64,000 bases of DNA, taken from Octopus sinensis (lineage: Eukaryota). Below are positions 2,645 to 49,418 of this stretch, piece after piece. Numbering within the stretch: position 1 is the stretch's first letter; each line of letters starts with the position of its first letter. Both the position numbers and the translations under genes were made by a program. The notes beneath the pieces were generated by a model. It was given only the letters and a program-made list of their open reading frames with translations, had not been told where the DNA came from and searched no databases. Location: NCBI RefSeq assembly GCF_006345805.1, contig NC_043007.1, forward strand, positions 43,028,001 through 43,092,000, written 5' to 3'.

Positions 2645-3891
2645 CTGAAATAAAGAAATGAGGAATGATTATTCCAGGATTACTGCTTATTGATAAGGGA
2701 AACTAATATAAAGTGGAGTACATTGGATAGGCTTTTTTTTTCTATGTTAAGAGAACACATGATTTTGTACAGGTAGGTTTGACTGGTATGCTTAAGAAAT
2801 TCATTTCACAATCACATGTTTCCAGGTTTAATTCCAGTGAATGGCATGTTTGGCAAGTCTCTTCTCCTATAGCTTTGGAGTGACCAAACCAAATAATTTA
2901 TGAGAGAAATTTGTTAGATGGAAACTAAAGGATACTGGTGTGTGTGTGTGTGTGGAGGGGGAGAGGTTGTGCATGTGTATTTTCTAATATATTAGCTATG
3001 GAATATTAGTTTTAATCATATTTGCTCAATGTTCAGAAATGAGAAACTTTAAGTAGTGAATCAAGAGACTCAGTAGTGAATAATATAGTTTATGCTTTGT
3101 CAAGTACACATTGTCTAGTTGTTAAGGTGTTACACTCACAATCATGAAATAATGGTTTCAATCTTGGACCGGGTGGTAGTGCATTGTGTTCTTAAGAAAA
3201 ACACTTCATCTCACATTGCTCAGCAATCACTTTGACACCTGATGTGCGGTACACTGTGCACCTGCTCAGGCCATGTGTTTGTGTGTGGGTGTGTAGGTAA
3301 GTGAGAGAGTGAAGGAGTGTGTGTGTGTGTGTGTGCGCACATGTATGTAAACACCTTTAAGAGCCTTTGACATAAAATGCTGATACTTTTTACTAAACAA
3401 AATAAAAGCTGTTAATTTTGTAGGTTAGGTTAAATGTCAAGTTGCTGCTTAGTTCAGATTCTCAACTGGATGGGGGCACACACATAAAGCACAAGTACAT
3501 CAATGATAATTATGAAGTACAGAAAAGACAAACAAATAAACAATATAGGAAGTTTGAAAAGTATAAAAAACAACGAAGTGGAAAAGGCACAGAAATAGGA
3601 ATCAAAATAATAACAATGAAAGAAAGTGTACAAAGAAAAAAATTACACCAAATGAAAAGAATAGAAAAGGAATATTTCAGGTTATGCACTTTATCAAAGA
3701 GAAGTAAAAGGAAGAGATGTAGGAGACAAAGAAACTGAAATAATACAAATTCATGATGTCAGCTTACATTGTAGATAAAATGCATTTTAATGATTCATAG
3801 AAAACTGGTCTAATGGGGTGGAGGGGAGAGGGAGGAAGAGGAAAAGAGAGGAGAGGGAGGGAGAGAGAGAGATTGGAAAAGTTGAACTTAC

Positions 3892-4098
3892 TTCAGGTTT
3901 GGTCCGAGCAACACCAATAAGGAAGAAGAGCTCGGAGAGAAATATGGATATGATGAAATTGATTCGAATTGTGTTGCAATTTGTGTTCAAGTTTTTCAAG
4001 AGGAAAAATATAAGGAAAGCAAAGCAAAGGCATATCATGGATATAATGAGCCCAATGTAGGTAATTGCTTTCAACTGAATGGCATTGGTTGGTACATA
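3892..4098 (-). CDS. CELSR: CELSR exon, TM1-TM2 (YVPTNAIQLKAITYIGLIISMICL...LFFLIGVARTKPE)
   Basis: tttacag acceptor, gtaagt donor, 207 nt, phase 0 to 0. Two hydrophobic helices of secretin-type 7TM. Confidence 0.94.
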
Positions 4099-4827
4099 CT
4101 GTAAAGAAAAACAAGTAAAACCAAGAATCATAAATTTTACTTTTAAAATTCCATATAACTTACCATATATGCTGGTGTAGAAGACAAGCTTCTTTTATTC
4201 TTAAAAATAACAAAAAATTGCCCAGCATCTGAATTGATAGTATTACAGATGAGATACTGAGTGCAAGATGGAACATTTTAAATTTCCTCTTTTTCTAACA
4301 AAATTTTTTTTTTTCTCAAGAAGTAGTGGTTTGTGTTTTGCAAGAGTGCATCTTTACACACCAGCAAATTTAGTAAATAAATTTGTGCCAGTCTCTTATA
4401 ACAAGGGAGATAATCATTTCTTCTGCTGTGTCTGGGTAGAGTCATTTTCTTTTGGTGCCTTATAATTTAACACACTCACCGGTAGAATTTCCACTTATTT
4501 CTTATTTTTATTTTCCTAAAATTTTCGTTGTGTCTTGTAACCTTTTGAATAGTGTGTTAAATTATGAGGCACAAAAAGAAAATAACTTTCCCCAGACACA
4601 ACAGAATATGTTTCAACACACAAACTCACATAAAGAATCTTGCAAACCAAATCAAAAAACGAAAAAATCATTTCTTCATAAAACTTGAAATAATTCTTTT
4701 TCTTCAAAGTGTATGCAACCTTTTTATTTTAAGTATACATAAAATATAAATTTCCTGGTAAAAATTCTTGGAAGAAAGCAATGTCCAAGTTGTAATTTTT
4801 AAAACATGTTTGTCATAATTTAGATAT

Positions 4828-6157: not shown

Positions 6158-7639
6158 CAGTAGTACATATATCTGAAAAAGAAGCACATTCTAAATCATC
6201 AAGAGCAGTAGTATATTTAAAAGAGTGTTATGGCTGGTCAGAGAGCGACTATCAGTTTTGCACCTATAAAGCGCTTAGTTGTATAGATGATTCATCAGAT
6301 TCAAATGAATGGAAGTTATATGCCCCTAGCCATGTGAGTTTGATGAGTCACCAGTACTGCTAAGTGCTTTAAAGGCACAAAACTGATGGTCACTCTCTGG
6401 CCAGCCATAACAAACAACCTTACATATATATATATATATATTATATATATATATATTCAACTGATATTTTCTTTAAATAAATATTAATACACTTAATGTA
6501 GTGAGGAAAAAAATTGTTCACTAATTAAGGCTCCCCCCTGTCATAAAATGCTTGAATCTGATGACAGCAATTAATACAATTAGAATTACAATTGCAATGA
6601 GAGTCAAGGAAAGAAAACATTAACACAAACATTCGTACTAATTAAATATGATCATCAGCAAACACACCAATAACTCCAGACCTACTAGTTTTTTTCCATG
6701 GGACTAACTCACCCCACCACTGCATATTGGATGTAACATCGCACATACCCTAACACTATCTTTGGATAATAGCTTTAATTTGTCACCCTGTTTAACACCA
6801 ACACCTGGCCTTTGAATGCCTTTAGTAGAACCCACCCTGTTGCAAGCGATCAGAATAGGTTTCTGGTTTGCAAATAACTAACTCCCTTCCATTTTAAAGT
6901 TGATGAAACTGTCTTGCTTCCCCTGACAAAGTGATTTTTAAAAAAACCTAATCTGTCGTGTGATAAAAGTAAGTATGTAAAATGATTGGTACATATAAGG
7001 ATAGATAAAAGTAACCTTATTACCATTATCTGCTATATTTCTATTCAGTAATTGATGTAATATTTAGAAGATATTGCTTTTGAAGTTGTTTTCCCTTTCT
7101 ACATACAAATATTTGCAACTAAGTGGATTCTTCTAAAAGTGCTCAAAGTTCCACATGGGGCCAGATGGCAGGTTAAGTCTAAAACAAATACTACAAAGCA
7201 TCTGATCCAACATTCTTGCCATTCTGCCAATCCTCTGCTCTGGATTGTTACTTTCCAATCAACTCCAAAAGGATGAAAGGCAAAGTTGATCCTGACAGAA
7301 TTTGAACTCAGTGTAATGGGAGCCAGAACAAATACTACAAAGCATTCTCATCTGATGCTCTAACATCTCAACCAAATAGCTACCTGGTTAACAGACTTTT
7401 GAGGTAAGTATAGAGAGGGATAGCTCAAAAATATCTCTCATATTTTTTTACTGTCAAAGGGTTATCAGAAGGAACCACTCATCAAAAAAAATTCCAGTCA
7501 TAAAACATTGTTCTTAACAACAAATCCAAGAACTAATCCAACAAAGGAATCACTACATGGTTATTCAACCTGCTACAAATAAGTCAAATTTTCCTTAAAA
7601 CACACTTGACCATCTAAAAAAAGGAATGATATATTGAGA

Positions 7640-8612: not shown

Positions 8613-10526
8613 TACATAATAATGTATTATGCATATTAAGGAAGCAAATGAGAGAAAGAGAACTAAATGTGCTAAGCTGGTGGAGCTATACCAAAACAAT
8701 TAGTGGCAAGTTAGGTGTGAGCTTATTGAGGTGAGATGTAGAGGATTTGCAGGCCAGTCTCTCTAAAGAGCCTACAACATACTGGGCATCACACACAATA
8801 AGGCTTCTGCACAATTTCCATCAATCAAATTCATTCACAAGACATTGGCTGACCCAGGGCTATAGTAGAAGACACTTGCCCAAGTAACTGTGCAGTGAGA
8901 CTAAACCTGAAACTGCGTGGTTGTTAATCAAACTTCTTAACCACAAATCCATATATAAGATAATTATGAAAATTTTAGTACTTCATTAATATTTGTAGGT
9001 ATTAGTAAATTTTTATGATTAAAGCATGCTCAAGTTTTAGTCAAAAAGCCAGAAAATATAGACTAAGAAAGGTTTATATAGATTATTTTATTTGCTTTAA
9101 TAATGATATATTACAAAATAATACATTTTGTAACATGATTCTTTATTGAAATACACTGAAGTTGATGATTGAAAATATTTTCATTTTGGCATGCTTGATT
9201 ATAAAAAATATAAACTAAATTTTGCAATTAGATTTTCATTTAATTTGAATAATCAATATTTTCATTTATTCTGCATCATCAAACAGTGATGGCTACTGTA
9301 GTGTTTTTCAAAGTCAGAGAAATTTACTGAATTTGAACAACAGCCAGATTTACAATGCTAACAAGAAGATTGTAACACTGATAAAATAAATTATCAAAAT
9401 ATAATATATAAGAATAAATTTAACTTCAAGTGAAACTCTTAAAAATATATAACTTTGTTTATTATAACTGAAGATAAAAATATATAAAAAGATAAAGCAG
9501 TTGAAATACACTGTTTCTTGGAATATAAAAAAATAACATGAAAGAGGTTGATCATTAAGTTCAGATTCTTTCAGAAACTCAGTGAGCTCCTTACTTAGTA
9601 AAGATTTCCAAAAATAGCCAAAAGTTATTGGACTCTATGCTCCCTTAAATTTACCAACACTACTCTTGACATGCTTATACACCCTTTCCTCTTTATGGCT
9701 CTTTTACTTTTCACTTTTCTGTCTTTTTAAGTTTTATTCTGTGTACTATGCATGAATTTTTGGTTCCCATTGCTGTCTTTCATTACTTGACTTATTGCTG
9801 CTCTGTCTTCAGTTTTATCTTTTTCCAAATAGTTGTAGTGCACCTGAGTATTGTATACATAAGCTCGTTATTATAATAGCACAATCCCAGCAAATCCAAA
9901 AATGAACAAAAGAAATCCAGAAAGGAATGAAAGGTGTATTTAGATGTGTGTCACAGCTACATATAGCCTTGTCAAAGTTGGTTATCACATTATATTAGAT
10001 TGTGGGACAGTAATGAACTAATAAAGTAAATATAGAAATAGATGGGTTAAATATTAACTATAAATGCCCACTAATAAAAACAAATATATGGACAGGTTTA
10101 GCCATAGCAGATGAGTTATATCAAAGATAAATGTATAAGAATACTTACTGAGATAAAACTATATGGTTCAAATCTTACTTAGAATATTATTCTTTTGGGG
10201 TGGGCAAAAATTATAATAATTGGGACAAAGAGTAAAACTGAATAAATGCTACTGAAAAAGAATGATTAAAATTACCCTAATAACAACTTAGTGATGCTCT
10301 GCCCCACCTGAAGAAAACTTAACAAAATTTATTTAGACAAGCAAAATGGCTCCAGTCAACAATAAAGAGTTTTAAAAGCTAAATTGTATTCTTTGTTGTA
10401 TCATGATGGCTTTTTCTTTTTTTTTTTTTACTTTGATGATGTTTTACATTGGTTGCAATTTGGACTCCTGGAAAGACCATTAAAGTGAGAAAGAAGTAAA
10501 TTTCAAAGGAAAGCATATTACCCTAC

Positions 10527-10659
10527 CTCAATGTCACTCATGTCCATGAGAACAGCATAGGTACTAAGATGTGAGCAGGAACAGACCACATAATTGTCTT
10601 CATTCAGCTGAAAATGGTCAGTCATCTCACATCCTTTCCTTGACCAATATCCATTTAAC
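10527..10659 (-). CDS. CELSR: CELSR exon, GPS motif (LNGYWSRKGCEMT...VCSCSHLSTYAVLMDMSDIE)
   Basis: tatttgtag acceptor, gtaggg donor, 133 nt, phase 2 to 0. Canonical GPS W..GC...CxCxHL-S/T. Confidence 0.96.
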
Positions 10660-10789
10660 CTACAAATAACATTAAAAAAAGCAATAAGAGAAAATTAGAA
10701 AGAATCACAAAATATTATTACCAAAAAGATGAAGAAAACGATTCTTTAAATATGCTAAGCCACTGGTTTTAATTGATTAATATCAATTT

Positions 10790-11331: not shown

Positions 11332-14156
11332 GTGGTTTCAAATTTTGGCACATGGCCAGCAATTTTAAGGAGGGGATAGCTGACTATGTTGACCTCTATG
11401 CTCAATTGGTACTTATTTTATTGACCCTAGAGAAATAAAAGGCAAAGTTGTCCTCCATTTTACTCTTTTCCAATGAGTTATAGTGTGCCTAACCATTATA
11501 CACAATAAACTCATTATTTTTATAAAACATGACCAGCTTGTCCCCCACCTCCCCAAATGATATATTCCAGATCATATTATTCAACATGTCTGCTTTAAAG
11601 TATTAAGGTCTTTGAAAGAGATTTGGTAGCTATTTCTAGCTGGTGAAGTCGTCACATTGAAATTATGTACCTGTGTACATTTTGTACACAGGTACATACA
11701 CACATTCATATACATACATAAATAAAAGAAAAAATGTTTCCTTCTCGAGCCATGCCAGACTCATAAGGGCTGGTTTACCGGTTTCAGTGACATATATATT
11801 CCCCACCTGTAATCGACTTAATCCCTTTGTCTGTCCTTGTTTGTTCCCTCTATGTTTAGCCCCTTGTGGGCAGTAAAGAAATATATATATTCCCCACCTG
11901 GACAGGATGCCAATCCATTACAGGATTACTCATTTTTGCCAACGGAATAGACTAGATTAATGTGAAATGAAGTGTTTTGCTGAAGAACACAACACATTGC
12001 CCAGTCCAGGAATTGAAACCACAATCTCACAATCATGAGTCCAAATCCCTAACCACTAAGTCATGCGCCTCCACATATACATACATTCATACAAATACAT
12101 ACATACACCACACCTACAGACATACACACATATTCCATCTACCAAATCTTTTGAAATAAACTACTCTGATAAGTGCAGAAGCAGCCACCTTTTGAAAGAA
12201 CAAACGTTATTAACCCTATAAGTACTTTAAGCATTATATTCATTAGAGGAGCTGTCTGTGAGACAGATGTGCTCACATAAAAACACTTAAAAGAATAAGC
12301 TACTTAAAAAAAGGTAAGAGAATGAAGAACTATCTTTTCTCATTTTCTTTTTCGTTCATTAACTCAAACAAAATTTTAAAAAAACTCTCAAAACAATTCC
12401 AGATTCTCAAGTAAGTGTTTAATTCAATAACTCAAGATAAGCAGAAGTGTGTGCATGTGTGAGGTGAGAGTGAAATATGTGTACATTCATCCAGTGTGTC
12501 TGTGCTGAGTAGATAAGGTGTTGAACTACCAGCCTCTGGTTTATGAGCCTCAATCTATTGCAGATGTTTCATTATTTCTAAACAGGAAATGTTATTCTAT
12601 GTATGTTAGTTGACTTCACTGCTGGGTATAAATATAAGACATGTAACCTAACTAGGGAATTTTTTCACTTCACTTTATTCCATAAAACTAGGTGCTGAAT
12701 ACCAGTCTCTTAAGGATCTCTCAAGGCTTAGATGATACTTATATTATATTTTCCAACAAACATTTTTAAGAGCTATTTTTTTTAATCATGAGTTAAAGAT
12801 CTTTCTATTAGCATTGTGTAAAGCAGACACTGGAATATGATGCAGTCCTTGGCCCCAGCAGATCCTGTCAAACTATCCAACCCACGCCAACTTTGATTAT
12901 GTTTGTAGTGTAACAACAGAGTAGTGGAGAAGGTGTAAATCACAATTCAGTAATCAGCTGATTTCAATACCAAGAATTACAGAGCTATGCAAAAATAACT
13001 ATACTAGCATTGACAAAGAGAAATACCAAATACCAAAAAGAAATAAATACAAGGAAATGATACTATCATGGCAACAGATTTTATGATGGTCTATGTCTGT
13101 CTTGTATGTTAATATTTTAGTACAGAACAGAAGCATTTACAGATCTTAAATATTTATTGATAAACATGAAAGCTGCAATTGAGTGATTCATAAGGATGCT
13201 AATTCAGTAAGAAAAAGGTTAGTAATTTGTATCCAATCTTTGGGGCCACAATATAACCCTGACTAAAGCTATACATAACTTTTAATAACCCATCGCCTAC
13301 CTGTTATAAATAGCAGTTTTCCACTCCAAGTAGCAAACAATACTGGTAGTTGTTTTTGTTAGCTTATAGTGCTGAACTCAACTTTTCTCATGAGTATAGA
13401 TCACAGATGAATGGGTTTGCAGGATTGAATTGGGTTCATCAGTGTCCATAAATCCAGTAGGTTTCAGAACATGTACACACAAAAGGTCATGAGATATATT
13501 TGCATTTTTGTCTTTTCAGCTTTAAGGCCATTTGAAGGCACAGTTTCATGGTATTAAGTGGATGAAAGACAAACTTCTCTTTGGATCAAATGAGTTTCTA
13601 TCTCATGTAACATTCCTAAAGCATTTGTTACTTATTCCCAATAGTTATATGAATTAAGGTTCATAGGATTAAATATACAAACAATAGACAACAAAACATC
13701 TGCAGTTGATATGAACTCAAAGAATTTAGATTTGTAGTTCATACAGTATCTTTTCAACTATTTGCTTCTGGGTTATTTAGCTACTATCAAAGAACAACTC
13801 TAGAGTAAAAAAAAAAAATAGTTGAAAAATATCTATTTTTCTGAGAATATTTCTATCAAGCAACGATGCTAAACCCTTCATTTTGTCTTTATATGATTTT
13901 TTTATTTTTATTTTCAGATTAATTAATAATCAAGATGGGAGAAGATCCTTCATGATTGTTATATTGTATACACTTTAGTTGGAATAATAAACAGAAGGGA
14001 GTATCAATATTTATATGCCACAAACACATACTTATAACTGGAAAGGCTTGCTGTCAACTTCACTCTCAATTTATCATGAACTTTTAAATACATATACAAA
14101 CTGGAAAACAGAAATGACCAAAAATAATGCTAAATTAAAAGACTGAGTTAACATAC

Positions 14157-14268
14157 CGCACTGTTTCATCATAGTTTTCTGGCATTACATCACCTAGACT
14201 TCGGTAAATCATGTAACCTACAATAGCTTTACCAGATGGGTTTTGCTTATGAGGTGGAATTGTGCCAA
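14157..14268 (-). CDS. CELSR: CELSR exon, GAIN (FGTIPPHKQNPSGKAIVGYMIYRSLGDVMPENYDETVR)
   Basis: tgtttttcag acceptor, gtatgt donor, 112 nt, phase 1 to 2. IYRSLG resembles the CELSR IYRTLG motif. Confidence 0.92.
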
Positions 14269-14919
14269 CTGAAAAACAAATATCCACTGAGTAAATGCAA
14301 GTATTAACTGTACAGAAAAATTTAGAGACAAATAAAATAAGGGATAAAGTGGAGGTTTATAATGCAACAAAAACAAAATATTAAAAATTTATAAATATAA
14401 AGTAAAATTAAAATATAATAAACTGAGATAAACATGGAATATATATGTATAATTAGATTAAAAGAAAAAATAAAATTGGAAGAAATTTGAAACGCATTAA
14501 CATTTTTGAGATCACACTTGGTTCTAAAATACAAACACCACCTTTAAAGTGATCTAAATTAAAACCTTCCAGAAAAATTCCATGTTAATTTATATTCTAA
14601 ACACCAGCTTAAAAATGACAAAGTTATTTTTCTAAATCTGTCATTATTCTTAAAATTAACTGATGCAAAAACAGTCTATTTTAGCATGAAAGTGATAATC
14701 AAAGAGGCAAACCTTGATTATGTCATATCTTGTAACAAATAAAAATGCAAAATAAATCTTAAGTCTTAAAAAGAATTGGAAAGCGTTAATTTTCAGACAC
14801 ATATTAATTGTAAATATTATAATACAGTAATTTATAAAAATCAATTCTCAGGGAGAAAACTTTGAAAATGAAAACTGTGGGTGCACAATAGAAAAACTAA
14901 AAAATTTGGTTATACATAC

Positions 14920-16589: not shown

Positions 16590-16858
16590 CTGCAAAGTAG
16601 AATTAAATCAAGATTATTACAAAAATCATCAGTATTACAAATTACACACCCGCCCACCACCACAAATGTTGCTATTACTGTCCTTTTCAACAATACAGTA
16701 TTAAAATATATAAAAGTAATAAATTACTTTAAAAAAAAATCCCATTTATCTAAACATTCTCAATATAATTTTAGAAGAGCTGCTGTTCATATTTATATGG
16801 ACTACCAATAATAATTAAAAAAATGAAAGAAAAAGTCAAAATTAGCTGCTGTTAATAC

Positions 16859-17068
16859 CTTGATAAATTTACGATCTTGTTCACTTGTCAAACTTAAACC
16901 TTCTTGCTTATTTTCATAAAACAAGATCTGGTTTATGGTCCTTAGAATAATACTGATGTCATTTCCATAGAGGTTTTTTGCTGATGCTGCTGACTCTGCT
17001 AACTGAAGCATCAATGTTTTTGATACATAGGTGTTGATTTTCAGAGAACCTCTTTCAATTTGCTGAAT
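16859..17068 (-). CDS. CELSR: CELSR exon, GAIN subdomain A (IQQIERGSLKINT...LYGNDI...YENKQEGLSLTSEQDRKFIK)
   Basis: ttttctccag acceptor, gtatta donor, 210 nt, phase 0 to 0. Confidence 0.94.
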
Positions 17069-18157
17069 CTGGAGAAAAGAATTAGAAGAAACAAAAGAGT
17101 TAAAATGTTTTTTAAAAAATAAAAGGTATGAAGTTCAATTCACAGGATATAAAAGCTTCAGCATTTGGTTTCTTCCAATAAAGCAGAGTTTAATAATTAT
17201 GAATTCAAACCTCATCAGAAGAGGAGAGGCTGGTGAAAAAGCCAAAATGAAGTTCCTCTAAAGGATCTCTGAAGTAATGTTATTCAACAGAGTGTATAGC
17301 TTGGAGATCAGGGATTCTTCCCCATATTGGTTTCAAAATTTAGCTCAACGCCAGCAACTTAGGGGAACTCAGAATGTAAACATGAACAAATGCCACTAAG
17401 CATTTTGCTGTGTGCTTACAATTCTGCCAGCTCATTACTCTCCTACTTCTCCGTATTGAAAGCACAGCACTGGAACTACAAATGATTAAAATGGCAACCA
17501 GCCATTTTAATGGCTCTTAGGAGACCTAAGAGTAGACCAAGAACAAGATGGCTAGATAATATCTGTAGTCTCAAATGACAGTTGCTTTTTATAGGACCCT
17601 ATGGAGGAGATGCCTGAGGACTCTACTCCCACAACACCCACTCCAGAAATAGCGGCAGAGGCACATTAATTTATCAATCAAAATACAAAAATCCCCCATA
17701 CTTTACAACTGGCAAGCATACTGAATAACTAATGTTAAGAAAAACATTGTCATAGAAATATTTGCTCTGATAATTCATATTCTAATGATAGAATTTTCAG
17801 GACCATTCAACTTTAAAGTCACTGAACCATAAAGAATAAAATAATTATCATTTCCTTTATTAATTTCTTCAAAAGATGACTTTTAGCTGGGCATTCTGAT
17901 TCACGCATTACCATCTATTATTGGCATAAAACCAGCAATTTTGGGGGAGGAGTAAGTTGATTACATCAACCCTAGTGTTCAACTGGTACTTATTTTATTG
18001 ATGGCAAAAGAGGTGAAAGACAAAGTTGACCTTGGCAAAATTTCAACTTTGCTTTTCATCTCTTTCAGGTTCAATAAAATAAGTACCAGTTGACTGTCTA
18101 ATATTGATTTTTGACATGAAACCATTGGTAGTCTTAACCTATAGATAAAGTATATAT

Positions 18158-18229
<72 letters not shown>

Positions 18230-18289
18230 ATAGTTGAGAAAAGATTAGAGATCTATACAAATTAAATTTTTATATATAAAAGATGGAGG

Positions 18290-18892
18290 TGGAAATAGCA
18301 CAGAAGTAAATCTAAGACATTTCAATTTTATAAAAATGATTTTAAAAATGATATAAAGAAAATATTACCAGTTTCGATGATGAATCTAATCTCATCAAAT
18401 ATCAGTAAAAATTTATAAAAATTTGAAGTAAAAACAGTTTGTCTTCTGTCTAGGGGTCAAAAACACATCTGGAGATTTTTTATTGAAGTTTTCTTTAAAT
18501 ATAGTTTGATATAGAGTTCAAAGTGTTAGAGAGTAAGAGAGGGGGTGTAGTTGTGTATTGTCTAAAAGAAATCTTTGTGGGTTCCTGCCAAGGGAGTGGC
18601 TTAAAAGCACAAAGATTTCTTTTAGACAATAGACAACTACACCCCCTCTCTTACTCTATAACAAAATATATTTAAAGAAGACTTCAATGAAAAATCTCCA
18701 GACATGTTTTACCCCGCCAGACAGAAGATAAACTATTTTTACTTCAAATTTTTATAAATTCTTACTGATAATTGATAAGATGAGATTCATCATCAAAACT
18801 GGTAATATTTACTTTATATAATTTTTAAAATCATTTTTATTAAATTGCTTCTTATATTGAAATATCTTAGATTTACTTCTGTGCTATTTCCA
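18290..18892. repeat. ~600-bp foldback (long inverted repeat / palindromic MITE-like element)
   Basis: Left arm tggaaatagcacagaagtaaatctaaga...; right arm ...tcttagatttacttctgtgctatttcca. The arms stay complementary up to a loop of about 30 nt near 18580-18608. Confidence 0.95.
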
Positions 18893-19147
18893 TGTCGAAA
18901 TCATTCAATTTACTACTTTATATAAACGCGAAGTAGATAAAACAGGGGACAACTGATGAAGGGATTGCTCTTTATGTTGCCTGTCTCATTTCTCTATTTG
19001 TTTCTTTCGTTGTCCAAAAAAAAGTTCGTTTTCCATGTTTTTGTTGTTTTTTTATGTTCTCATTTTGTTCACTTTTTTTGACGTCCTGTACCCATTTATA
19101 CATGTATATATACATATATGTGTAGGTATGTAAATATATGTATGTAT

Positions 19148-19499
19148 ATCATCATCATCGTTTAACATCCGCTTTCCATGATAGCATGGGTTGGACAATT
19201 TGACTGAGGTCTGGCAAACCAGATGGCTGCACTAGACTCCAATCTGATCTGGCAGAGTTTCTACAGCTGGATGCCCTTCCTAACGCCAACCACTCCAAGA
19301 TTATGGCACGTAAAAAGCACCCACTACACTCACGGAGTGGTTGACGTTAGGAAGGGCATCCAGCTGTAGAAACACTGCCAGACCAGACTGGGCCTGGTGC
19401 AGCCTTCTGGCTTCCCAGACCCCAGTCGAACCGTCTAACCCATGCTAGCATGGAAAACGGACGTTAAACGATGATGATGATGATGATGATGATGATGAT
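19148..19499. repeat. Head-to-head pair of RTE 3'-tail elements forming an imperfect inverted repeat
   Basis: (CAT)n-cgtttaacatccgctttccatg...ctacagctggatgcccttcctaacg on the left; cgttaggaagggcatccagctgtag...catggaaaacggacgttaaacg-(ATG)n on the right. Confidence 0.92.
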
Positions 19500-19669
19500 A
19501 TATATATATATATATATATATATTTGAGTAGAAAAATGAAATATCTTTTTATGGATAATTCGTTTAACCGATACCTGGGTAGCAAATTCACATCAGAAAT
19601 AACACGGTTGAAGTTACGTGCCTAGGGCAGATACTACGTGTTTCCGTGTGGAAATTTGTGTGTATTTTT

Positions 19670-20341
19670 ATTTAAAAAATGACTATTATATATAAATTAT
19701 CAATGAAAATATATAAATGTTTATAAATATTATAATTAAGATCTAAAATAATCATAATTGTTAAGTTTTAAGTTTCTAGTTTGATAATAGAGTTTATTAT
19801 AAGTAAAATTATTATATTATTTATATCTTAAAAATATTGTTTAAATATTTCAATTAACCTGAAGATTGACTGTAACCATAACTCGAATTATTAATTGAAT
19901 TTAAATTATTGTTATTTGAATTGGTACAGCCATGAAACGATCGTAGTGTTTTACTCTTTATCTTTTATTAAACTTTTAATACTTTTGATATTTAATTTTT
20001 AAAAAATAAATAAATAAATAAATAAATAAATTAATTAATTAATTAATAAATAAATAAAATAATATATAAATATAAAAATATACATACATACATATATATA
20101 TATATATATTTGTATATATATATAAAATTTATAAGTTTAAATTATTTAAATAATTTTTTATTTTTAACTTTTATATCTTTAAATTAATTTTATGTATTGG
20201 CTTATGTTTTTCACTGTTTGATTTGCCTAATAGTGGTTTTATCTCTAATTTAATATAATATAATATAATATATTTATACTATAAAATTGGATTTAATCCT
20301 AAATCTAATTTAACCCCAGTAAGTTTGGATTTATTCCCTAA

Positions 20342-20385: not shown

Positions 20386-21030
20386 TGCTGTTTAGTAGCT
20401 AGTATTTTATCCCTTTAGAGTGGATGAAAAATATAAGCAAGTTAGTCATATATTAGAATAATTAATCAAAGCCAGACAACACCTAATATATGAAGTTTAA
20501 AGTCAGTGCCATTGGTTGATTTGATTAAAGTTGAGACATGCCATTTATCAGCACCAGAAACAGAAGCAGAAGCAGCAACAAAGGATTAGATAGCAACATA
20601 ATCTCTCAATCATTGGATTGTTATAAGACTACAATTTTGTAATAAAACAGCCAGAGTAAAATTTATTTGAAATCATTCAATTTACTACTTTATATAAAAC
20701 AGCTGTAAGGCAACTTAATTATAACTGCAAACACTGAATTAAAACAGAAAACAGTGTTAGATAATTAAAACAGGAACAGAACTTTGGAGGTTACTAATTA
20801 AAGTTAAAGTTTAGACAGTCAAGAAACCTGAGGCCCTACTTTTAAAAAAAACCTGATATAAAGTCAATAATTGCTTTATTATTATTCATATATATTCCAG
20901 TTCTTTCATGTCTTGAGGTTTCTAACCATACCAGAACTTTTTTTTTTTGATGATTTCTATTCTATTTCAGATTTTGAATTTTAACACCATTCTTTTATCA
21001 CATTATATAACATTCATTTCTAATGCATAC

Positions 21031-21125
21031 CTGGTTTTGTATTTTCACGAATTCTTTGCTGGTACAATTGAAAAGGTCTGGAGCAAGCCAGCTTTGTAAT
21101 TTGGTACAGTTGCGTTTAGCATCAC
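21031..21125 (-). CDS. CELSR: CELSR exon, HormR (GDAKRNCTKLQSWLAPDLFNCTSKEFVKIQNQ)
   Basis: ttatttcag acceptor, gtatgc donor, 95 nt, phase 1 to 0. WxxPDLFNCTS motif. Confidence 0.94.
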
Positions 21126-23266
21126 CTGAAATAATAAATTACTCATAATGTAAATTGCTTGCTCTTTCTGAGTTTTTTTTTTTTTTGTTTTGCTTTTGTT
21201 TTTTAACTGATATTCATTGCAAGAGATATTAGCAAGTTAGAAATCAATAAATAAAACATATAGACTTGAGCACAGTTATTCTATTGGTTAATCATCTTCA
21301 TTACTATCATCAACCAATTCTCCAGAGCTTCAATTGGGTGCAACATGCCATGTTCTTCATAATTCAGTTTATACATGATAGAATGTGCAATGAGGTCCTG
21401 AATCACACAAGAAAGTAGGATATCTTATGTGTTTGATCTATAGCATAATCATCCAAATGAAGAGAATACCTTGGCTACTTGGCAGCCACAACTTGCTTCA
21501 GAAACACCCAATCAAAGGAAACAATCTCATAATAATATCAAACATCAACAAATAAAAATAAAATCAGTTTCTTCATAGAAATTTCTTCAGATCTTGATGT
21601 TGCACATAACCGCTAATTTATGAGAGAATCTCCAGTTCACATGTACTAGAGATGAAGTTAAGAAATATAAAAGCAACTATCTAGCTGTAAAACGCTGCCT
21701 CAATAAAAATGAATGCAAAATTGAATGAATGACTAACATACAGAGTGATTAAGGCTGTTATAACAGCATTATAGGCCTTAAGAAGCAAAGCAATGCACTG
21801 GAGCTCCTTATGCAGAACCACAACATACACAAATAAGCTGTCTGCTGTGCCTGAGTCTAAAGACACTGACTGTGGATGTAAAGTTTATCAAAATTCATTA
21901 AATTTACATTAAAACTTTAGTTCCAACATTTTTGATATTGAACAAATTATTAATGGAATTAACTTTAGATTCAGCAACACCTGAACAAAGATACCTGAAT
22001 TATTTCAAATATTCAGCTTTAAAAGCACTGTCTTTTCTAAAATATAAACAATTTGATACGACTATTTCATATCAAATGGGTCATTACTGTTGCTTAGCCC
22101 TGACTGAGCAGACCTATGACACAAGATTTTCCATCCATGATCACTCTGCTTTGTTTCCAGGATAAAGTGTAACTAGGACTACACTATTCAATATCTCCTA
22201 CCTTTTTATATGGTAGGATGTGATTTGAGAGAGATTTGGCTTCTATTTTCTAGCAGATTAAGTGACTTCATAAAAGGCCCCAGCTGCAAAGCTGACAGAT
22301 TCCAACTTGGTCAAATTCTGTTTGGACAAATTCCTGTTAAAATTTCCATACAATCTGCTTAAAGTTGAATATTTTCCCTAACAATAACTTTTAACTTCGG
22401 TTGTAAGGTGGTGATATTACTTGCAGCAAGGAATCACAAATGGTTGAGTGTATGAAGTATTGAATCATTAGAGGAAAACCCCCTTTTTTTTCTCTTGGCT
22501 GATATCTAAGAAAAACAATGAATTGTTCCATCTACTTAACTGACAACAAAGCATTTAAAAAAGTATAAACACTAGGTCTGTGAAAAAACACTGAATTAAC
22601 TGAAAATTGACAAGCAATTTAATACTTTATAGAGTTAAATCAGTCATAGCTAAAATATGGACTAACTGTACAGAAAGTTGTTTGCAATCATACTGTTGAT
22701 AGAAAACGATGCATATAACAAATTGAGATAACACTGCTAAGTTGAAAGTATATAAATTACATATTTTTCATTCATTTGCTCATTCGTTTAATATTCATTT
22801 CCCCTGTTGATACTCTTCCCATCAACAACCCTTACTGGTCTTTTCAAGAAAGGATCTTTGAAAATACAAACCAACTGGTCACAATGTCACCAGAGAATGT
22901 AAACATTGTATTGCTGTTTCAGCTAGTTGGGGATGAATGAAGCTGTGGAATGTGAACATTTGTGCACATATACATATATGTACACACTCGTTCACATACA
23001 TACATGTTCACACACACACACACACACAACATGAACTTCTACACAGTTTCTGCCTACCAAATACACTCACAAAGCATTGGTAGTCCTGAAGTTATAATAG
23101 AAACCAAGTGGGACAGAACCTGAAACCACAGAGTTGCAAAGTGAACTTTTTATCCCACTTTGCTATGCTTGTGTGTGTGTGAAAACAAATAGACAGACAG
23201 GCAGACAGATAGATAAGGCATGCTTGTACCTATGTATATATACATATAAACACACATGCACACACA

Positions 23267-24990: not shown

Positions 24991-25760
24991 AGGGCTAGAA
25001 GACTATAATAGTGGATGACAATTTAGAGGGACAGAAGACAACATTATCCAAAGTAGTCTTTCTTTTTCAAGATGATAGAATGTGATTTGAAGGAAATTTG
25101 GCTGCTATTTCAAGAAGGTCAAACAACTACATAGAAGTCCTTTCACTGGTTTCAAGTAAGTTCTGAAATGCTTTAAATAATGACAGTACTATGGAGTTTG
25201 ATAAATGTTTCATTGACTTTTAGTGCTTAGTTCAATTCTATATGCTGGAAAATGCTACATAAAATGGGTTAATTTTACTATCCAAGATGTTTATTTCTCA
25301 TCTGTTTTAATTGTTTTGATACCAACCTGCCTAAGACAACCCCTAGTTCTATTTTAATGTGTTTATATTTAAATGAAAACTGCCCATTATAATTTTATGT
25401 AAGAAACTATGTTTTCAGTTAAGTTCTAAACATCAACTAAAACATGAAAATTTTAGTTATTTTACTAGATTATTACAGATACTTGATTATCCTTTTGATT
25501 AACTGAAATATAAGGGAGTGTATTGTTAGAAATATGGCCATAAAAGGATTAATGCTACAGAAAGCAAGAAAAAATAAATAAACATCAGCTATAAGGTTTC
25601 TTATAATTTAGGAAGGATTAACTTTTCAGTAATCTGCAGAACACCCCTATTTCTGGTGCTGCTTCCACTGTAATTGTGATTCTTCTCTCTCGTTATCATT
25701 CTTGCAAGACTTAATGATACAGATACAATTAAAAAATAAATAATAAAGAAAGAAACTTAC

Positions 25761-25944
25761 CTCGGCAACCTGATTCATGCACTTCTGCAAAGGGACTCAG
25801 GCAGCTGTCACATCTGCGACCAACCACTCCTTTTTTACAATTGCACTGACCAGTGACAGGGTTACAAAAAAAACCTTTAGATCCAACATGGTAACAATTG
25901 CAAGGAAAACATTGGTCTTCATTTTTTGGTTTATAGTGGTTAGT
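25761..25944 (-). CDS. CELSR: CELSR exon, EGF-laminin (TNHYKPKNEDQCFPCNCYHVGS...CNPVTGQCNCKKGVVGRRCDSCLSPFAEVHESGCR)
   Basis: aattacag acceptor, gtaagt donor, 184 nt, phase 0 to 1. Not in the ORF track. Confidence 0.95.
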
Positions 25945-27430
25945 CTGTAATTAAGATAAAATTTTTTAAAATAACTTCATAGTAGAAAATTGTGTAACTA
26001 CTGCTGTAACACCAAACAAAAGTACGTAAAATTGGGGTAATAGCAAGACAATTTAATATAAATTTAAAAACAAAAACAAAGACAGTAAACAATATGTAGA
26101 AGATGACATGTTTTGGAATTTTGATTTTTTTTTTCTTACTAACAATCAGTTCCGGTGAGTTAGACTTATAACACAAGGATATTCAATAAAATATCTTGAA
26201 GTGCATAAAACTCCATACATATCATTGGTGATATATGGCACAGTGTGAAAGTCAGAGTGATTTGTATCTATTTAGCCATTCAATGGTTTATGCATGATTG
26301 AATGATCTGATGGTTGCTTTAGGCTCCATTTCTTGAGACTCTTTGGAAACATTGGCACTTCTCACATGATTTGGACTAATGGAATTATGTGAGAAGTATA
26401 GCTGAGAGAGTTTACCAATCCCACAACTGTACATATTCATATATAATATGCATCCATGTATGATGCTCATCACTATTTAAGATCCACAAAATCATAGAAA
26501 AAAGAAGTGTTTAGTCAGATTTATTATAATTGCTGTATAATAAACATTGAAAAATTTACATATCCTCAAAACTATAAGCAAATTCAAAAGTTATCATCAA
26601 CATCATTGAAAATTATTAGTGTAGGTTGCAAAAGAGTATTTGCTGTAAAGTCAACCTATGACAAGTCAGCAATATGGAAGGGTATAAAAAAAACATAATG
26701 CATTACTTCCATTATACATCCTTTTAAATACTTTGATCATCAAATACTTTCTATCATTCGATCAAAATGCTTATAGTGATGGCTCATTATAATAATTACA
26801 GTATTTCAGAAACAGAAGTATTTTTCTTTTTCAGTTTATATTCACATTTTCATAATGACAATACCATTGTATTATGAACTATTTGTTAATTTAAATTTCA
26901 GATTAAATAATTCAAGTAGGATTTTGAATAATATAAGTATTACATTCTGGCCAACCATACTGAAGGTTGGCAGCATGGAATGCATGTCTTCTAGTTGTTC
27001 CAAGCATATAATATATTATCACAATCATAGAGAAATGTAACATTATTATAGGGATCTTAACTCTTCATTACATATCAGTTGGCTTGGACAATAGGTATAA
27101 CTAACTTACTTTCAGTCATGCCATCATGAATATGTTGATGCACTTCCCTAGCAGAAATGGGTAACATTTAATTCTCTTGGATAATGTTCTTTTCTGATAT
27201 TTAAGTTCTAAAAACTTTATGTATTATACTCAAATACATATTTTATAAACAAACTTAGAAGCACCAAGTGGGTTGGTATTCTACAGAAAATAAACGAATT
27301 CTCAAATGGAGATAGACTGTGACAGCAGCTCAGAAAATTGGGCAAACACCCTTGCTGACAGCAGCAACAGCAACAACAGCAACAGCAGCAACAACAACAA
27401 CAACAGCAACAACAACTATAAAATACATAC

Positions 27431-33330: not shown

Positions 33331-34299
33331 CTTTATATATATATATATATATATATATATTCTTACTCACATTCAAAATACCACAGCACCTAAAGGAAAT
33401 ATGCTAATTTAACAGCTAAATTGTTTCTCAAATCTTTTTTCTGTTTTTTAGGGGACTAGTATCATAGATTTCATTTCATTATAAACTTGAAAAGTAGCCA
33501 AACAATAAGGTTCACTATACTTTATATTTGTCTCAAATTTTGGCACAAGGTCAGTAATTTCAGGGAAAGAAGTAAGTCAATTACATTAACCCCAGTTCTC
33601 AACTGGTACTTATTTTATTGACCCTGAAAGGATGGAAGCCAAAGCTGACTTTGGGGAAAACTGAACTAAGAATGTAAAGACAGACAAAATGCCACTAAGC
33701 ATTTTTCCCAGCATGCTAAAAATTCTGCCAGCTTGCCACTTTGCACTGCTTTTCATATTAAACCATCTAAAATCACACAGACACTAATAAATTCAGTTTC
33801 CATTTTTTCCATGTCGTGTCGAAATTTTCATCACTTCACTGCAATCTGGACATTTACACAATCCCACTGTGACTGTGTGTGAGTGAAAGAGAGAGGTGAG
33901 GAGAGGAGAGAGGAAGAGAAATACAGAGAGAGAGAGAGTGTGTATGCAAAGTTCGTTTTCACTGGGAGTTTAAGGTTTACCTTATGATTTATTAAACAGG
34001 TTGAACAAGCTGTCATGTGAGACTCAAAGTCTCAGTCAAAACTTATTTCAAATATATTTGACTCTACTTTTACTATTGAGCCTCTCCATCAGTAAATATT
34101 CAGTTGTTATTCTAAAACTAGTTTTTAAATAATAAACTTAAATTAGTACACACACACACAACATACATACAGTGATTATACTACGGTTTAGAATATATAT
34201 ATGCACATACTTCTGTACATGCATATGTGTGTGTGTGTGTGTGTGTGTGTGGTGTCTGTATGTTAATATTATATATATATATATTCAGTATATACATAC

Positions 34300-43927: not shown

Positions 43928-44135
43928 TCATCATCATCATCATCGTTTAATGTCTGCTTTCCATGCTGGCATGGGTTGGACAATTTGTTTGAGGACTGAT
44001 GAACCAGATGGCTGCACCAAGCTCCAATCTTATTTGGCAAAGTTTCTACAGCTGGATGCCCTTCCTAACACCAACCACTCTGAGAGTGTAGCGCCACCGG
44101 CACGAAGTCCAGTCAGGCAGTTCTGGCAATGACAT
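43928..44135 (-). mobile_element. RTE 3' tail-only copy
   Basis: (CAT)n-cgtttaatgtctgctttccatgctggcatggg...ctacagctggatgcccttcctaac. Confidence 0.85.
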
Positions 44136-44565
44136 ATAAAGGCTGAAAGACATCTATTGAAAGGTTGACAAAGAACCAGTGGATGAGGAAAAGATTCCTT
44201 TTGGCTTTGTTCGCTGCCTCGATACACTGCCGTGTTGGTTTGAAAGTAGTATCAATCATTATCCCAACTTCCTTTTCTTCAGTGACCATCTTAAGATGTT
44301 GGTGTTTGGGGCCAATAGTCAAGGGAGAGTTTGGAGGTGAACATATTAGCATTTTGAGGCATTCAAGGGCAGATTCCATTCTTCTGCCCAAGATGTCGTC
44401 TGCAAATAGGAGGACTCTTCCAGCAAGAAAATCTGGCAAGTCGTTGATATAAAAAAGGAAAAATATTGGCCCCAGCACCGACCCCTGGGGAACGCTGCTG
44501 CAGGTATTCATTTCCACGGAGAGATCTCTATTTATCTGCACCTGAACATACAGACGCACCAACAC
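44135..44565 (-). mobile_element. CR1/L2/Jockey-group LINE reverse transcriptase fragment
   Basis: ORF 44113-44565 contains SSVPQGSVLGPIFFLFYINDLP and LFADD. Confidence 0.85.
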
Positions 44566-49252: not shown

Positions 49253-49285
<33 letters not shown>

Positions 49286-49341
49286 CCCAGACACAATCAT
49301 ACATATTCAAAGCCAAATTGTGTTTGTGTATATGCATGTAG

Positions 49342-49377
<36 letters not shown>

Positions 49378-49418
49378 AAAGAGAAGCATGAGTGACAAAC
49401 ACTAGCAATAATACTGAC

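What the first reader, a model, noticed from the sequence alone, without database searches (positions are those of the whole stretch)
18290..18892. ~600-bp near-perfect foldback inside a CELSR intron
Seen: two ~280-bp arms are reverse complements along their length, with scattered substitutions and small indels, around a ~30-nt loop. No family match is visible elsewhere in the window. Established: long intronic dsRNA is the classic ADAR substrate, and coleoid cephalopods edit RNA extensively. Inference: this is either an unclassified palindromic MITE/foldback family or a local inverted duplication. It could form a ~280-bp pre-mRNA hairpin or DNA cruciform between the HormR and GAIN exons.
Basis: partly seen in the sequence, partly recalled or inferred. 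Interest (0 to 1): 0.7.

Follow-up and report, generated by a model that had tools for sequence, protein, structure and literature searches.

The report
Head-to-head Penelope retroelement ends forming hairpin
The 600-bp foldback is real, but it is two truncated tail ends of a Penelope-like retrotransposon inserted head-to-head into a (TA)n microsatellite, a known habit of these elements, and it should give the CELSR pre-mRNA a long intronic hairpin.

Summary
Window 18290-18892 folds as arms 18290-18579 and 18608-18892 around a 28-nt loop (RNA MFE -351 kcal/mol, z = -30). It lies in the intron between the second HormR exon and the first GAIN exon of a minus-strand CELSR-like gene.

Each arm is the last ~300 nt of the 3' UTR of a Penelope-like retroelement (PLE). 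The family has hundreds of copies, and most in the sample are monomers. Monomers share the (TA)n-side end and are truncated at nested points on the other side. Upstream they lead into an RT, CX5CxxC linker and GIY-YIG ORF.

The foldback is two 5'-truncated copies joined 5'-to-5', with the 3' ends facing outward. The same polarity holds in all ~12 inverted pairs of this family and in 9 of 9 pairs of a larger related family. A ~43-bp extension sits on exactly one arm in 9 of 9 pairs. The two arms carry equal private divergence (11 and 11 changes) and no excess of shared changes, which points to one old insertion event.

All of this matches published PLE behaviour. ADAR editing of the hairpin is plausible but untested. 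Interest is low to moderate.

The parts
18150..18231 (.). Interrupted (TA)n microsatellite flanking the left copy. It is the presumed insertion target, merged with the element's 3' tail.
   Evidence: Sequence read. 26 of 44 family copies have a TA run of at least 10 nt within 140 bp outside the 3' end. (TA)n targeting by PLEs with a CX2-5CxxC linker is described in PMC8557442.
18232..18274 (-). 43-bp 'extension' (AGTTGAGAAAAGATTAGAGATCTATACAAATTAAATTTTTATA) lying between the (TA)n run and the left copy's 3' end. The right arm lacks it.
   Evidence: Present in 21 of 44 copies overall, but in exactly one arm of each of 9 of 9 inverted pairs. [quoted passage not shown]
18275..18289 (-). TATAAAAGATGGAGG, the 3'-terminal bases of the left copy. 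They are conserved in the family but lie outside the hairpin because the right arm lacks them.
   Evidence: Alignment of 23 copies with flanks.
18290..18579 (-). Left arm. This is the 3'-UTR end of a 5'-truncated PLE copy whose sense strand is the window's minus strand.
   Evidence: Orientation is taken from the RT/GIY-YIG ORF fragments, which lie on the opposite strand in loci oriented like this arm.
18580..18607 (-). Hairpin loop. These 28 nt are simply the next 5'-ward stretch of the left copy (GGTTCCTGCCAAGGGAGTGGCTTAAAAG). The left copy's homology runs through 18609, and the CA at 18608-18609 is shared with the start of the right arm as a 2-nt junction microhomology.
   Evidence: Monomer copies read straight through this sequence and continue with ...GCATTTATTGAATGGG.
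18608..18892 (+). Right arm. This is the 3'-UTR end of a second 5'-truncated PLE copy whose sense strand is the window's plus strand.
   Evidence: It has 11 private differences from the family majority, the same count as the left arm.
18893..18918 (+). Tentative: a degenerate outermost 3' end of the right copy, ending in TTTATATAAA. It has no extension and no long (TA)n run.
   Evidence: Only a weak resemblance to the family terminus TATATAAAAGATGGAGG, read by eye. Not secure.
21001..21138 (-). Open frame holding the second HormR (HRM) exon of the host gene. It is the exon upstream of the foldback's intron in the gene's sense.
   Evidence: Joined to the exon near 23.55 kb, it gives PF02793 HRM at E = 3.1e-10 over model positions 2-65 of 66.
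16805..17134 (-). Open frame holding the next host exon downstream of the foldback, the start of the GAIN domain.
   Evidence: PF16489 GAIN, model positions 3-50 of 210, E = 0.032, which is weak. The GPS and 7tm_2 exons follow at 10521-10694, 3790-4194 and 2372-2668.

Best explanation
The foldback is a by-product of one retrotransposition event of a Penelope-like element (PLE). This PLE is the canonical type, with a C-terminal GIY-YIG endonuclease and a CX5CxxC linker. It inserted into a (TA)n microsatellite in a CELSR intron.

Two severely 5'-truncated copies of the element's last ~300-380 nt were laid down head-to-head. Their 5' ends meet at the centre and their 3' ends face outward. One copy is 28 nt longer than the other, and that surplus forms the loop.

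Shown: the identity of the arms, their polarity, the nested 5' truncation of the family, the one-sided extension, and the equal age of the arms.

Inferred: how the pair was made. My preferred model is that the PLE endonuclease cut both strands of the (TA)n target and both 3'-OH ends primed reverse transcription on the UA-rich 3' end of the template. One primer would use the terminal (UA)n run and so copy the 43-nt extension. The other would use the internal UAUAUA and so lack it. The two converging cDNAs were then joined at a 2-nt microhomology (CA). A close variant is snap-back self-priming of one cDNA about 30 nt behind its own 3' end.

Consequence, also inferred: every CELSR pre-mRNA carries a hairpin of ~285 nominal bp (270 paired, 27% G+C). 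It is a likely substrate for promiscuous ADAR editing and has no evident function of its own.
For: 1. The arm is one unit of an interspersed family with 674 first-look candidates. Most scored copies are monomers with no partner within 1.5-5 kb.

2. Monomers share the (TA)n-side end and stop at nested points on the other side: unit only, plus tail, plus TG minisatellite, or plus 140-570 nt of region X. This is the signature of 5' truncation.

3. Region X and beyond encode, on the opposite strand, RT motifs (FDVVNLYTKIP; QTSGTAMGTKVAPTYANLVMG; RYLDDCFI). These are followed by KCGKANCGTC and LIYIITCNGCQHNYIG. Pfam GIY-YIG scores E = 1.5e-5, 25.7 bits, above the 22.6 cut-off, with weaker hits in two more copies. 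In 9 of 12 X-bearing loci the unit lies 0.45-1.4 kb 3' of X on the same strand.

4. An intact 798-aa ORF of a related family (L067) has RVT_1 (E = 4.4e-7). Its C-terminus aligns to this family's endonuclease fragment at 46% identity, E = 6e-48.

5. All ~12 inverted pairs of this family are 5'-to-5'. In the related family, 9 of 9 close inverted pairs are (-,+) and none is (+,-).

6. The centres of the three tight palindromes differ. No (TA)n remnant sits at any of the three centres.

7. The extension is on exactly one arm in 9 of 9 pairs, against about 50% of copies overall. That gives p of about 0.002.

8. Private changes per arm are 11/11 in the window and 18/18, 22/24, 16/24 and 18/26 in four other pairs. 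Shared-derived changes number 1-2, no more than the background mean of 1.37.

9. Published PLE traits match: heavy 5' truncation, an inverted 5'-truncated copy adjacent at the 5' end, a 30-40-bp tail at one end, and (TA)n targeting linked to the linker motif (PMC8557442). A PLE protein cleaves and extends both DNA strands and initiates reverse transcription internally (PMC11167929).
Against: - No hammerhead ribozyme, typical of canonical PLE pLTRs, was found. This holds for Rfam at E <= 1 in the window region, at E <= 0.1 in eight long copies, and for a core-motif scan.
- The family's own RT fragments are too decayed to pass Pfam's threshold (RVT_1 E = 0.066). The RT call therefore rests on motifs read by eye and on a relative at about 65% identity.
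- The right arm has no clear (TA)n run or canonical terminus outside 18892.
- The genome search scores only the best candidates, and the sample was seeded with the palindrome itself. The frequency of dimers is therefore not measured.
- The window's arm pair ranks third of 406 pairs for identity. This is explained by both arms lying close to the family majority, but it is also compatible with some homogenisation between them.
- The choice between two-ended priming and snap-back priming is not resolved.
- No RNA data support any transcript-level effect.
Confidence: 0.8

Rival explanations
1. Two independent insertions of the same PLE family, in opposite orientations, into one (TA)n hot spot.
For: The family targets (TA)n, and each insertion leaves new TA runs behind. 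Three different palindromic repeat structures are clustered within 1.6 kb here. The arms are no more alike than unrelated copies are.
Against: The two 5' ends abut directly at a 2-nt microhomology, with no (TA)n left between them. The same is true in L002 and L004. Only 5'-to-5' pairs are seen, about 12 of 12 in this family and 9 of 9 in the related one. Exactly one extension per pair in 9 of 9 is not expected from independent draws at about 50%. Private divergence is matched within pairs.
Confidence: 0.08
2. A local inverted duplication of a single resident copy, long after its insertion, by replication template switching or fold-back repair.
For: The junction is asymmetric, with a short spacer and a 2-nt microhomology. 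That resembles fold-back inversion junctions.
Against: Mutations acquired before such a duplication would be shared by both arms. Only 2 shared-derived sites exist, both also present in 5-7 other copies, against a background mean of 1.37. Arm-to-arm identity of 91.6% equals arm-to-L021 identity of 91.3-91.7%. The same architecture, polarity and one-sided extension recur at 8 or more other loci.
Confidence: 0.06
3. A palindromic MITE or Foldback-type DNA transposon that moves as a hairpin-shaped unit.
For: It has long inverted arms. At least two other tight palindromes of the same sequence exist, at C19:26484455 and C19:36311675.
Against: The three centres differ. Most sampled copies are monomers truncated at nested points. 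The arms continue into a retroelement ORF rather than a transposase. The outer ends are not equivalent, since the extension is on one side only.
Confidence: 0.03
4. An assembly or library artefact, meaning a chimeric fold-back read or a mis-joined repeat.
For: PLE tandem and inverted structures are known to trouble assemblies (PMC8557442).
Against: The arms differ at 23 aligned positions and by several indels of up to 17 nt. A fold-back chimera would be essentially identical between arms. The flanks are unique and differ on the two sides.
Confidence: 0.02

Closest known systems
Inverted and tandem insertion structures of Penelope-like elements (pseudo-LTRs; Evgen'ev & Arkhipova 2005 as cited in Craig et al. 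2021, PMC8557442)
   Same: RT plus C-terminal GIY-YIG with a CX2-5CxxC linker. Strong 5' truncation. An inverted 5'-truncated copy abutting the 5' end. A 30-40-bp extension at one end only. A preference for (TA)n targets.
   Different: Here both copies are truncated to about 300 nt, so nothing but a hairpin remains. No full copy and no direct pLTR lie at this site. No hammerhead ribozyme was detected in the 3' region of the family.
LINE-1 twin priming (5' inversions; Ostertag & Kazazian 2001, cited from memory)
   Same: Both ends of the cut target prime reverse transcription. The products are joined in inverted orientation at a microhomology.
   Different: In twin priming the second primer anneals internally, so the two segments cover different parts of the RNA. 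Here both arms cover the same 3'-terminal part, which gives a true palindrome.
Drosophila Foldback elements and palindromic MITEs (for example the Xenopus palindromic Harbinger repeat in PMC5625713)
   Same: Long adjacent inverted arms that fold into tight hairpins and occur in several places in the genome.
   Different: Those are DNA transposons whose termini define the mobile unit. Here the mobile unit is a retroelement, and the palindrome is an insertion by-product with a different centre at each locus.
Inverted Alu pairs as ADAR substrates (PMC526178; PMC5625713)
   Same: Two inverted copies of a retroelement in one intron are predicted to form long dsRNA.
   Different: Alu pairs arise from independent insertions that lie apart. 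This pair is contiguous, with a 28-nt loop, and probably arose in one event. Editing has not been shown here.

Membership tests
Penelope-like element (canonical EN+ type) | Reverse transcriptase followed by a C-terminal GIY-YIG endonuclease in one ORF | tested here: met
   This family's decayed copies give GIY-YIG PF01541 at E = 1.5e-5, above the cut-off, and weaker hits in two more copies. RT motifs A, B and C lie upstream in the same strand order, with RVT_1 only at E = 0.066. The intact relative L067 (798 aa) has RVT_1 at E = 4.4e-7, and its C-terminus aligns to this family's endonuclease fragment at E = 6e-48.
Penelope-like element (canonical EN+ type) | [quoted passage not shown] | tested here: met
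   KCGKANCGTC and LIYIITCNGCQHNYIG are read directly in L031. KCGRSNCATC and IIYVIKCSGCHQDYVG are read in L067. The clade was not assigned by phylogeny.
Penelope-like element (canonical EN+ type) | Frequent 5' truncation with a common 3' end | tested here: met
   Twenty loci with 5-kb flanks show nested end points: 9 with the unit only, 3 with the tail added, and 6 with 140-570 nt of region X added.
Penelope-like element (canonical EN+ type) | An inverted 5'-truncated copy adjacent at the 5' end (head-to-head) | tested here: met
   The window copy, L002, L004, L005, L008, L012, L019, L029 and L043, plus further pairs listed, are all 5'-to-5'. In the related family 9 of 9 pairs are (-,+).
Penelope-like element (canonical EN+ type) | [quoted passage not shown] | tested here: met
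   A 43-bp extension sits on exactly one arm in 9 of 9 pairs and on 21 of 44 copies overall.
Penelope-like element (canonical EN+ type) | Partial direct tandems forming pseudo-LTRs | tested here: inconclusive
   Direct pairs were seen at C7:96621634/96624042 (L031) and C1665:155783/159762, but they were not dissected. None occurs at the window locus.
Penelope-like element (canonical EN+ type) | A hammerhead ribozyme motif in the pLTR or 3' region | tested here: not met
   No Hammerhead family matched in Rfam at E <= 1 (window 17500-20000) or at E <= 0.1 (eight loci, 31.5 kb). There were no consistent CUGAUGA...GAAA cores. Minimal or split hammerheads could still be missed.
Penelope-like element (canonical EN+ type) | Microsatellite ((TA)n) insertion bias | tested here: met
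   26 of 44 copy ends have a TA run of at least 10 nt within 140 bp outside the 3' end. The window has (TA)n at 18150-18231.
MITE / Foldback DNA transposon | Copies share both termini and the same internal layout, and are bounded by fixed-length target-site duplications | tested here: not met
   Centres differ among the three tight palindromes. Most sampled copies are single arms with variable inner ends. Target-site duplications cannot be read inside (TA)n.
MITE / Foldback DNA transposon | Terminal repeats shared with a transposase-encoding parent element | tested here: not met
   The arm sequence continues into an RT/GIY-YIG ORF, not a transposase.
Post-insertion local inverted duplication | The arms are each other's closest relatives and share private substitutions | tested here: not met
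   There are 2 shared-derived sites against a background mean of 1.37. Arm-to-arm identity of 91.6% is about equal to arm-to-L021 identity.
ADAR-edited intronic dsRNA / hairpin-RNA locus | A long, nearly perfect duplex on the transcribed strand | tested here: met
   The minus-strand fold has an MFE of -355 kcal/mol, 270 pairs and a longest perfect helix of 41 bp. The host gene is on the minus strand.
ADAR-edited intronic dsRNA / hairpin-RNA locus | Clustered A-to-G mismatches in RNA-seq, or 21-22-nt small RNAs from the arms | not testable with these tools

The most novel reading that the evidence does not exclude
Head-to-head insertion by (TA)n-targeting Penelope-like elements, and by the short repeats they may mobilise, could be a systematic generator of tight long hairpins in octopus genes. 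That would help explain why the octopus genome has an exceptionally high density of loci able to form long, nearly perfect dsRNA, and an exceptional hyper-editing load. Porath et al. 2017 (PMC5625713) reported this but, in the passages I read, did not attribute it to a repeat class for octopus. In support, a second and unrelated retroposon forms the same kind of head-to-head hairpin 200 bp away (19095-19534). A related PLE family also has at least 11,550 candidate copies, with many head-to-head pairs.
Probability: 0.2. Interest if true: 0.6.

Novelty: new member of a known kind. Interest (0 to 1): 0.3.

Why it matters
For annotation, the result replaces 'unclassified foldback' with a definite origin. 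It also shows that very short PLE insertion by-products can pass for MITEs or hairpin-RNA genes.

For retroelement mechanism, this family offers clean natural data on the odd PLE integration reaction. Three regularities stand out: the invariant 5'-to-5' polarity, exactly one extension per pair, and the matched age of the arms. These fit the recent biochemical finding that a PLE protein cuts and extends both target strands.

For cephalopod RNA biology, the element is a concrete and testable example of how long intronic dsRNA arises in a neural adhesion-GPCR gene. Nothing here suggests that the hairpin itself has been selected for a function.

Tried and rejected
- Rfam on the region and on eight long family copies gave only sub-threshold microRNA-model hits, driven by generic hairpins and microsatellites. 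There was no hammerhead, tRNA-like or other family.
- The phage collection had no match. That search was pointless for an animal repeat.
- PDB sequence searches with the RT and endonuclease fragments found nothing meaningful.
The second HRM exon was instead found by eye among the stop-to-stop ORFs and then confirmed.
- I first read the family as a long-TIR DNA transposon with internal-deletion derivatives, because all pairs converge. I dropped this once 5-kb flanks showed that most copies in the sample are true monomers with nested truncation and RT/GIY-YIG coding remnants appeared.
- I considered a SINE with a tRNA-like head. No such head was found, and the sequence runs on into an ORF.
- I considered Helitron or Helentron derivatives because of the AT target and internal microsatellites. 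The ORF content rules this out.
- Arm-to-arm identity alone could not separate the models, because the family phylogeny is star-like. I used shared-derived versus private substitutions instead.
- I did not run the large protein-database searches. Length limits would have excluded full-length PLE proteins.

Full report

Yes. The repeat finder recovers three collinear inverted segments that together span 18290-18892. A gapped alignment of the left arm against the reverse complement of the right arm gives 254 identities over 303 columns. That is about 92% over the 273 columns where both arms have a base. The indels include one of 11 nt and one of about 17 nt.

The stem closes at CTTTGTG (18573-18579) and CACAAAG (18608-18614), which leaves a 28-nt loop. 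As RNA the plus strand folds to -350.6 kcal/mol. Twenty dinucleotide shuffles average -112 +/- 8, so z = -29.8. The minus strand, which is the host gene's sense strand, folds to -355 kcal/mol with 270 pairs and a longest uninterrupted helix of 41 bp. The element is 27% G+C.

In a scan of the whole window for close inverted repeats this is by far the largest.

**2. Gene context**

Open frames on the minus strand match Pfam families in the following order (gene sense runs from high to low coordinates).

| Domain | Window coordinates | Note |
|---|---|---|
| Laminin_G | 49233-49703 | |
| EGF_laminin | 25732-25950 | |
| HRM | near 23.55 kb and 21001-21138 | two exons; joined E = 3.1e-10, model positions 2-65 of 66 |
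| GAIN N-terminus | 16805-17134 | weak, E = 0.03 |
| GAIN | 14138-14356 | weak |
| GPS | 10521-10694 | |
| 7tm_2 | 3790-4194 and 2372-2668 | |

From general knowledge this architecture is that of CELSR/Flamingo adhesion GPCRs.

I did not verify the organism. The assembly is 2.72 Gb in 13,516 contigs, which fits my recollection of an octopus assembly.

**3. The arm is a unit of an abundant, mostly monomeric repeat**

A search of the window's own genome with the 603-bp element gave 674 first-look candidates, of which 40 were scored. Nearly all hits cover only query positions 1-320, which is one arm plus the loop.

With 1.5-kb flanks most loci hold a single copy. With 5-kb flanks 18 of 20 such loci still have no partner.

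Alignment with flanks shows that monomers read straight through the window's loop. They continue with ...GGCTTAAAAGCATTTATTGAATGGGTTTTATGTCCACCTG, then (TG)n, a conserved ~170-nt 'tail' and a TG-rich minisatellite. The loop is therefore not a special sequence. It is only the part of the left copy that the right copy lacks.

On the outer side all copies share ...TATATAAAAGATGGAGGT|GGAAATAGCACAG, preceded by a (TA)n run. About half also carry a 43-bp segment between the two.

**4. What the repeat is**

The copies share the (TA)n-side end and stop at nested positions on the other side. In the 20 loci, nine hold the unit only, three add the tail, and six add 140-570 nt of a further conserved region X. 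The other two are L043, a spaced head-to-head pair, and L050, where an inverted fragment of X follows the unit. This is the pattern of 5'-truncated retroelements whose 3' end lies at the (TA)n.

Region X is itself repeated, with at least 523 candidates. In 9 of 12 X-bearing loci the unit lies 0.45-1.4 kb away on the same strand.

On the opposite strand, X and the sequence beyond it carry decayed coding fragments:
- RT motifs: FDVVNLYTKIPHDYG, YRQTSGTAMGTKVAPTYANLVMG and WKRYLDDCFI.
- A thumb-like block: FTMEF..LAFLDILI...IFYKPTDSKQYL.
- A linker: KCGKANCGTC.
- An endonuclease core: LIYIITCNGCQHNYIGQTG...HRQQI.

Pfam calls the last block GIY-YIG at E = 1.5e-5 and 25.7 bits, above the 22.6 cut-off. 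Two further copies give weaker hits, and a stitched RT fragment gives RVT_1 only at E = 0.066.

A protein search of the genome with the RT fragment found a much larger and better preserved related family, with at least 11,550 candidates at about 65% identity. One member (L067) has an intact 798-aa ORF with RVT_1 at E = 4.4e-7. Its C-terminus aligns to this family's endonuclease fragment at 46% identity, E = 6e-48.

From established knowledge, RT followed by a C-terminal GIY-YIG endonuclease is unique to Penelope-like elements. The CX5CxxC linker is the type described for the Neptune and Nematis clades (PMC8557442).

The arm is therefore the last ~300 nt of the ~1-kb 3' UTR of a PLE. The element's sense strand is the window's minus strand for the left arm and the plus strand for the right arm.

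**5. What the foldback is**

It is two 5'-truncated copies joined 5'-to-5', with their 3' ends outward. Five lines of evidence show this is a property of the insertion process rather than chance or later rearrangement.

(a) Polarity. Every inverted pair found in this family has this orientation.
- Three are tight palindromes: the window, C19:26484455 and C19:36311675.
- Several are spaced or unequal pairs: L005, L008, L012, L019, L029 and L043, plus two more listed.
- None is tail-to-tail.
- L012's second arm is only ~25 nt plus its (TA)n run.
- L029 is a 2.75-kb example with arms of about 2.1 and 0.57 kb.
- In the related family, the 150 scored matches include nine close inverted pairs. All are (-,+), which is head-to-head. 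One pair is a direct tandem.

(b) Junctions. The three tight palindromes have different centres. They are therefore not copies of one mobile palindrome. In none of the three is a (TA)n remnant left at the centre, which two independent insertions into a microsatellite would tend to leave. In the window the two copies overlap by a 2-nt microhomology (CA, 18608-18609).

(c) The one-sided extension. The 43-bp segment is present in 21 of 44 copy ends overall. It is present in exactly one arm of each of nine pairs. With independent arms this would happen with probability of about 0.5 to the ninth power, or 0.002. In the window it is on the left (18232-18274).

(d) Age. Relative to the family majority, the window arms carry 11 and 11 private changes. 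Four other pairs carry 18/18, 22/24, 16/24 and 18/26. Shared-derived changes number 1-2 per pair, no more than the background mean of 1.37 for unrelated copies. The arms of a pair are therefore equally old and were born close to the family consensus. The foldback is ancient, with about 4% decay per arm. It is not a recent local duplication and has not been homogenised.

(e) Not an artefact. The same divergence between arms, 23 substitutions plus indels, excludes a fold-back sequencing or assembly chimera.

**6. Comparison with what is known**

Craig et al. 2021 (PMC8557442) describe exactly these traits for PLEs:
- 'a high degree of 5'-truncation';
- partial tandems;
[quoted passage not shown] - (TA)n targeting associated with the CX2-5CxxC linker.

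[quoted passage not shown] It also found that reverse transcription starts internal to the RNA's 3' end.

Together these suggest a mechanism, which is my inference. Both 3'-OH ends of a cut (TA)n target anneal to UA tracts at the template's 3' end. One uses the terminal (UA)n beyond the extension, and the other uses the UAUAUA just inside it. Each primes a cDNA, and the two truncated cDNAs are then joined. This would account for the polarity, the single extension, the variable and unequal arm lengths and the microhomology.

Snap-back self-priming of one cDNA is an alternative for the tight cases, whose loops are all about 28-40 nt. I cannot decide between the two models.

The one canonical PLE trait I could not find is a hammerhead ribozyme.

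**7. Function**

The hairpin will be present in every primary transcript of the gene. From general knowledge, long imperfect duplexes of this kind are substrates for promiscuous ADAR editing.

Porath et al. 2017 (PMC5625713) report that octopus has both an exceptional hyper-editing signal and an exceptional density of loci able to form long, near-perfect dsRNA. Editing of this hairpin is therefore likely if the intron is expressed in neural tissue, but nothing here tests it.

Nothing suggests selection for the structure either. The arms decay at equal, apparently neutral rates, with 11 transitions and 12 transversions between them. DNA cruciform extrusion seems unlikely, from general knowledge, given the 28-nt spacer and the mismatches.

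**8. Verdict**

The foldback is real and is a striking structure, but it is explained. It is a miniature example of the head-to-head insertion structures that Penelope-like elements are known to make.

Its interest lies in two things. The first is the unusually clean regularities of this family: polarity, one extension per pair and matched arm age. The second is the untested possibility that such insertions contribute materially to the octopus dsRNA and editing landscape. A second hairpin of the same architecture, built from a different repeat, lies only 200 bp away.

**Caveats**

- The genome searches score only the best candidates and were seeded with the palindrome. Dimer frequencies are therefore not estimates.
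- Clade assignment of the PLE was not done by phylogeny.
- No reads, RNA data or sister genomes were available.

Noticed in passing
window 19095-19534: A second foldback lies 200 bp downstream. It is a head-to-head dimer of a different, (GAT)n-tailed SINE-like repeat. Seven monomer copies lie elsewhere in the window, near 15257, 39128, 41517, 43927, 47717, 56410 and 61824. The tails face outward, the ~37-nt loop is supplied by the longer arm, and TA-rich runs flank both sides. An extension-like TTGAGTAGAAAAATGAAAT occurs only on the right (about 19525-19545).
   Followed up: partly
window 17979-18093: A 115-bp palindrome (51-nt arms, 84% complementary) made from a third repeat family. Related fragments lie at 11402-11450, 33599-33654 and 60295-60360. 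Three palindromic repeat structures therefore sit within 1.6 kb around TA microsatellites.
   Followed up: partly
G000 genome-wide, e.g. L067 = C3:116341139-116341492 with flanks: A very large related PLE family with at least 11,550 first-look candidates. Many copies have long open frames of up to 923 aa, and there are many head-to-head pairs. It looks much younger than the family that built the foldback.
   Followed up: partly
L014, L015, L026 and L007 (oriented), at the junction of the ORF end and the 3' UTR: Just after the PLE ORF stop there is a short (TA)n run next to TGGAAAAAAGATTTAGG. This resembles the terminal extension (TA)n-AGTTGAAAAAAGATTAGAG. The ~1-kb 3' UTR that carries the unit may itself be a fused second 3' end, or a non-autonomous partner that travels with the PLE. 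Some X-bearing copies (L032, L036) lack the unit module.
   Followed up: no
L024/L025 = G000:C19:12434610-12435583: Two 100%-identical direct copies of the unit lie 639 bp apart. This is either a recent tandem duplication or an assembly duplication.
   Followed up: no
window 6226-6412: Another hairpin (82-nt arms, 80% complementary, 23-nt spacer) lies close to a (TA)n run that begins about 25 bp downstream.
   Followed up: no
window 44116-44592 (-): An ORF fragment with a sub-threshold RVT_1 match (E = 2e-5, 24.8 bits against a 29.6 cut-off). It is probably a decayed retroelement in another intron of the same gene.
   Followed up: no
window 47024-47586 (+): Two open frames carry mariner-like motifs read by eye (HDN...PYSPDLAP). 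Pfam gave no hit.
   Followed up: partly
window 60614-61673 (-): Identical 56-aa open frames occur at 60614, 61063 and 61506. This indicates a tandem repeat with a period of about 445 bp.
   Followed up: no
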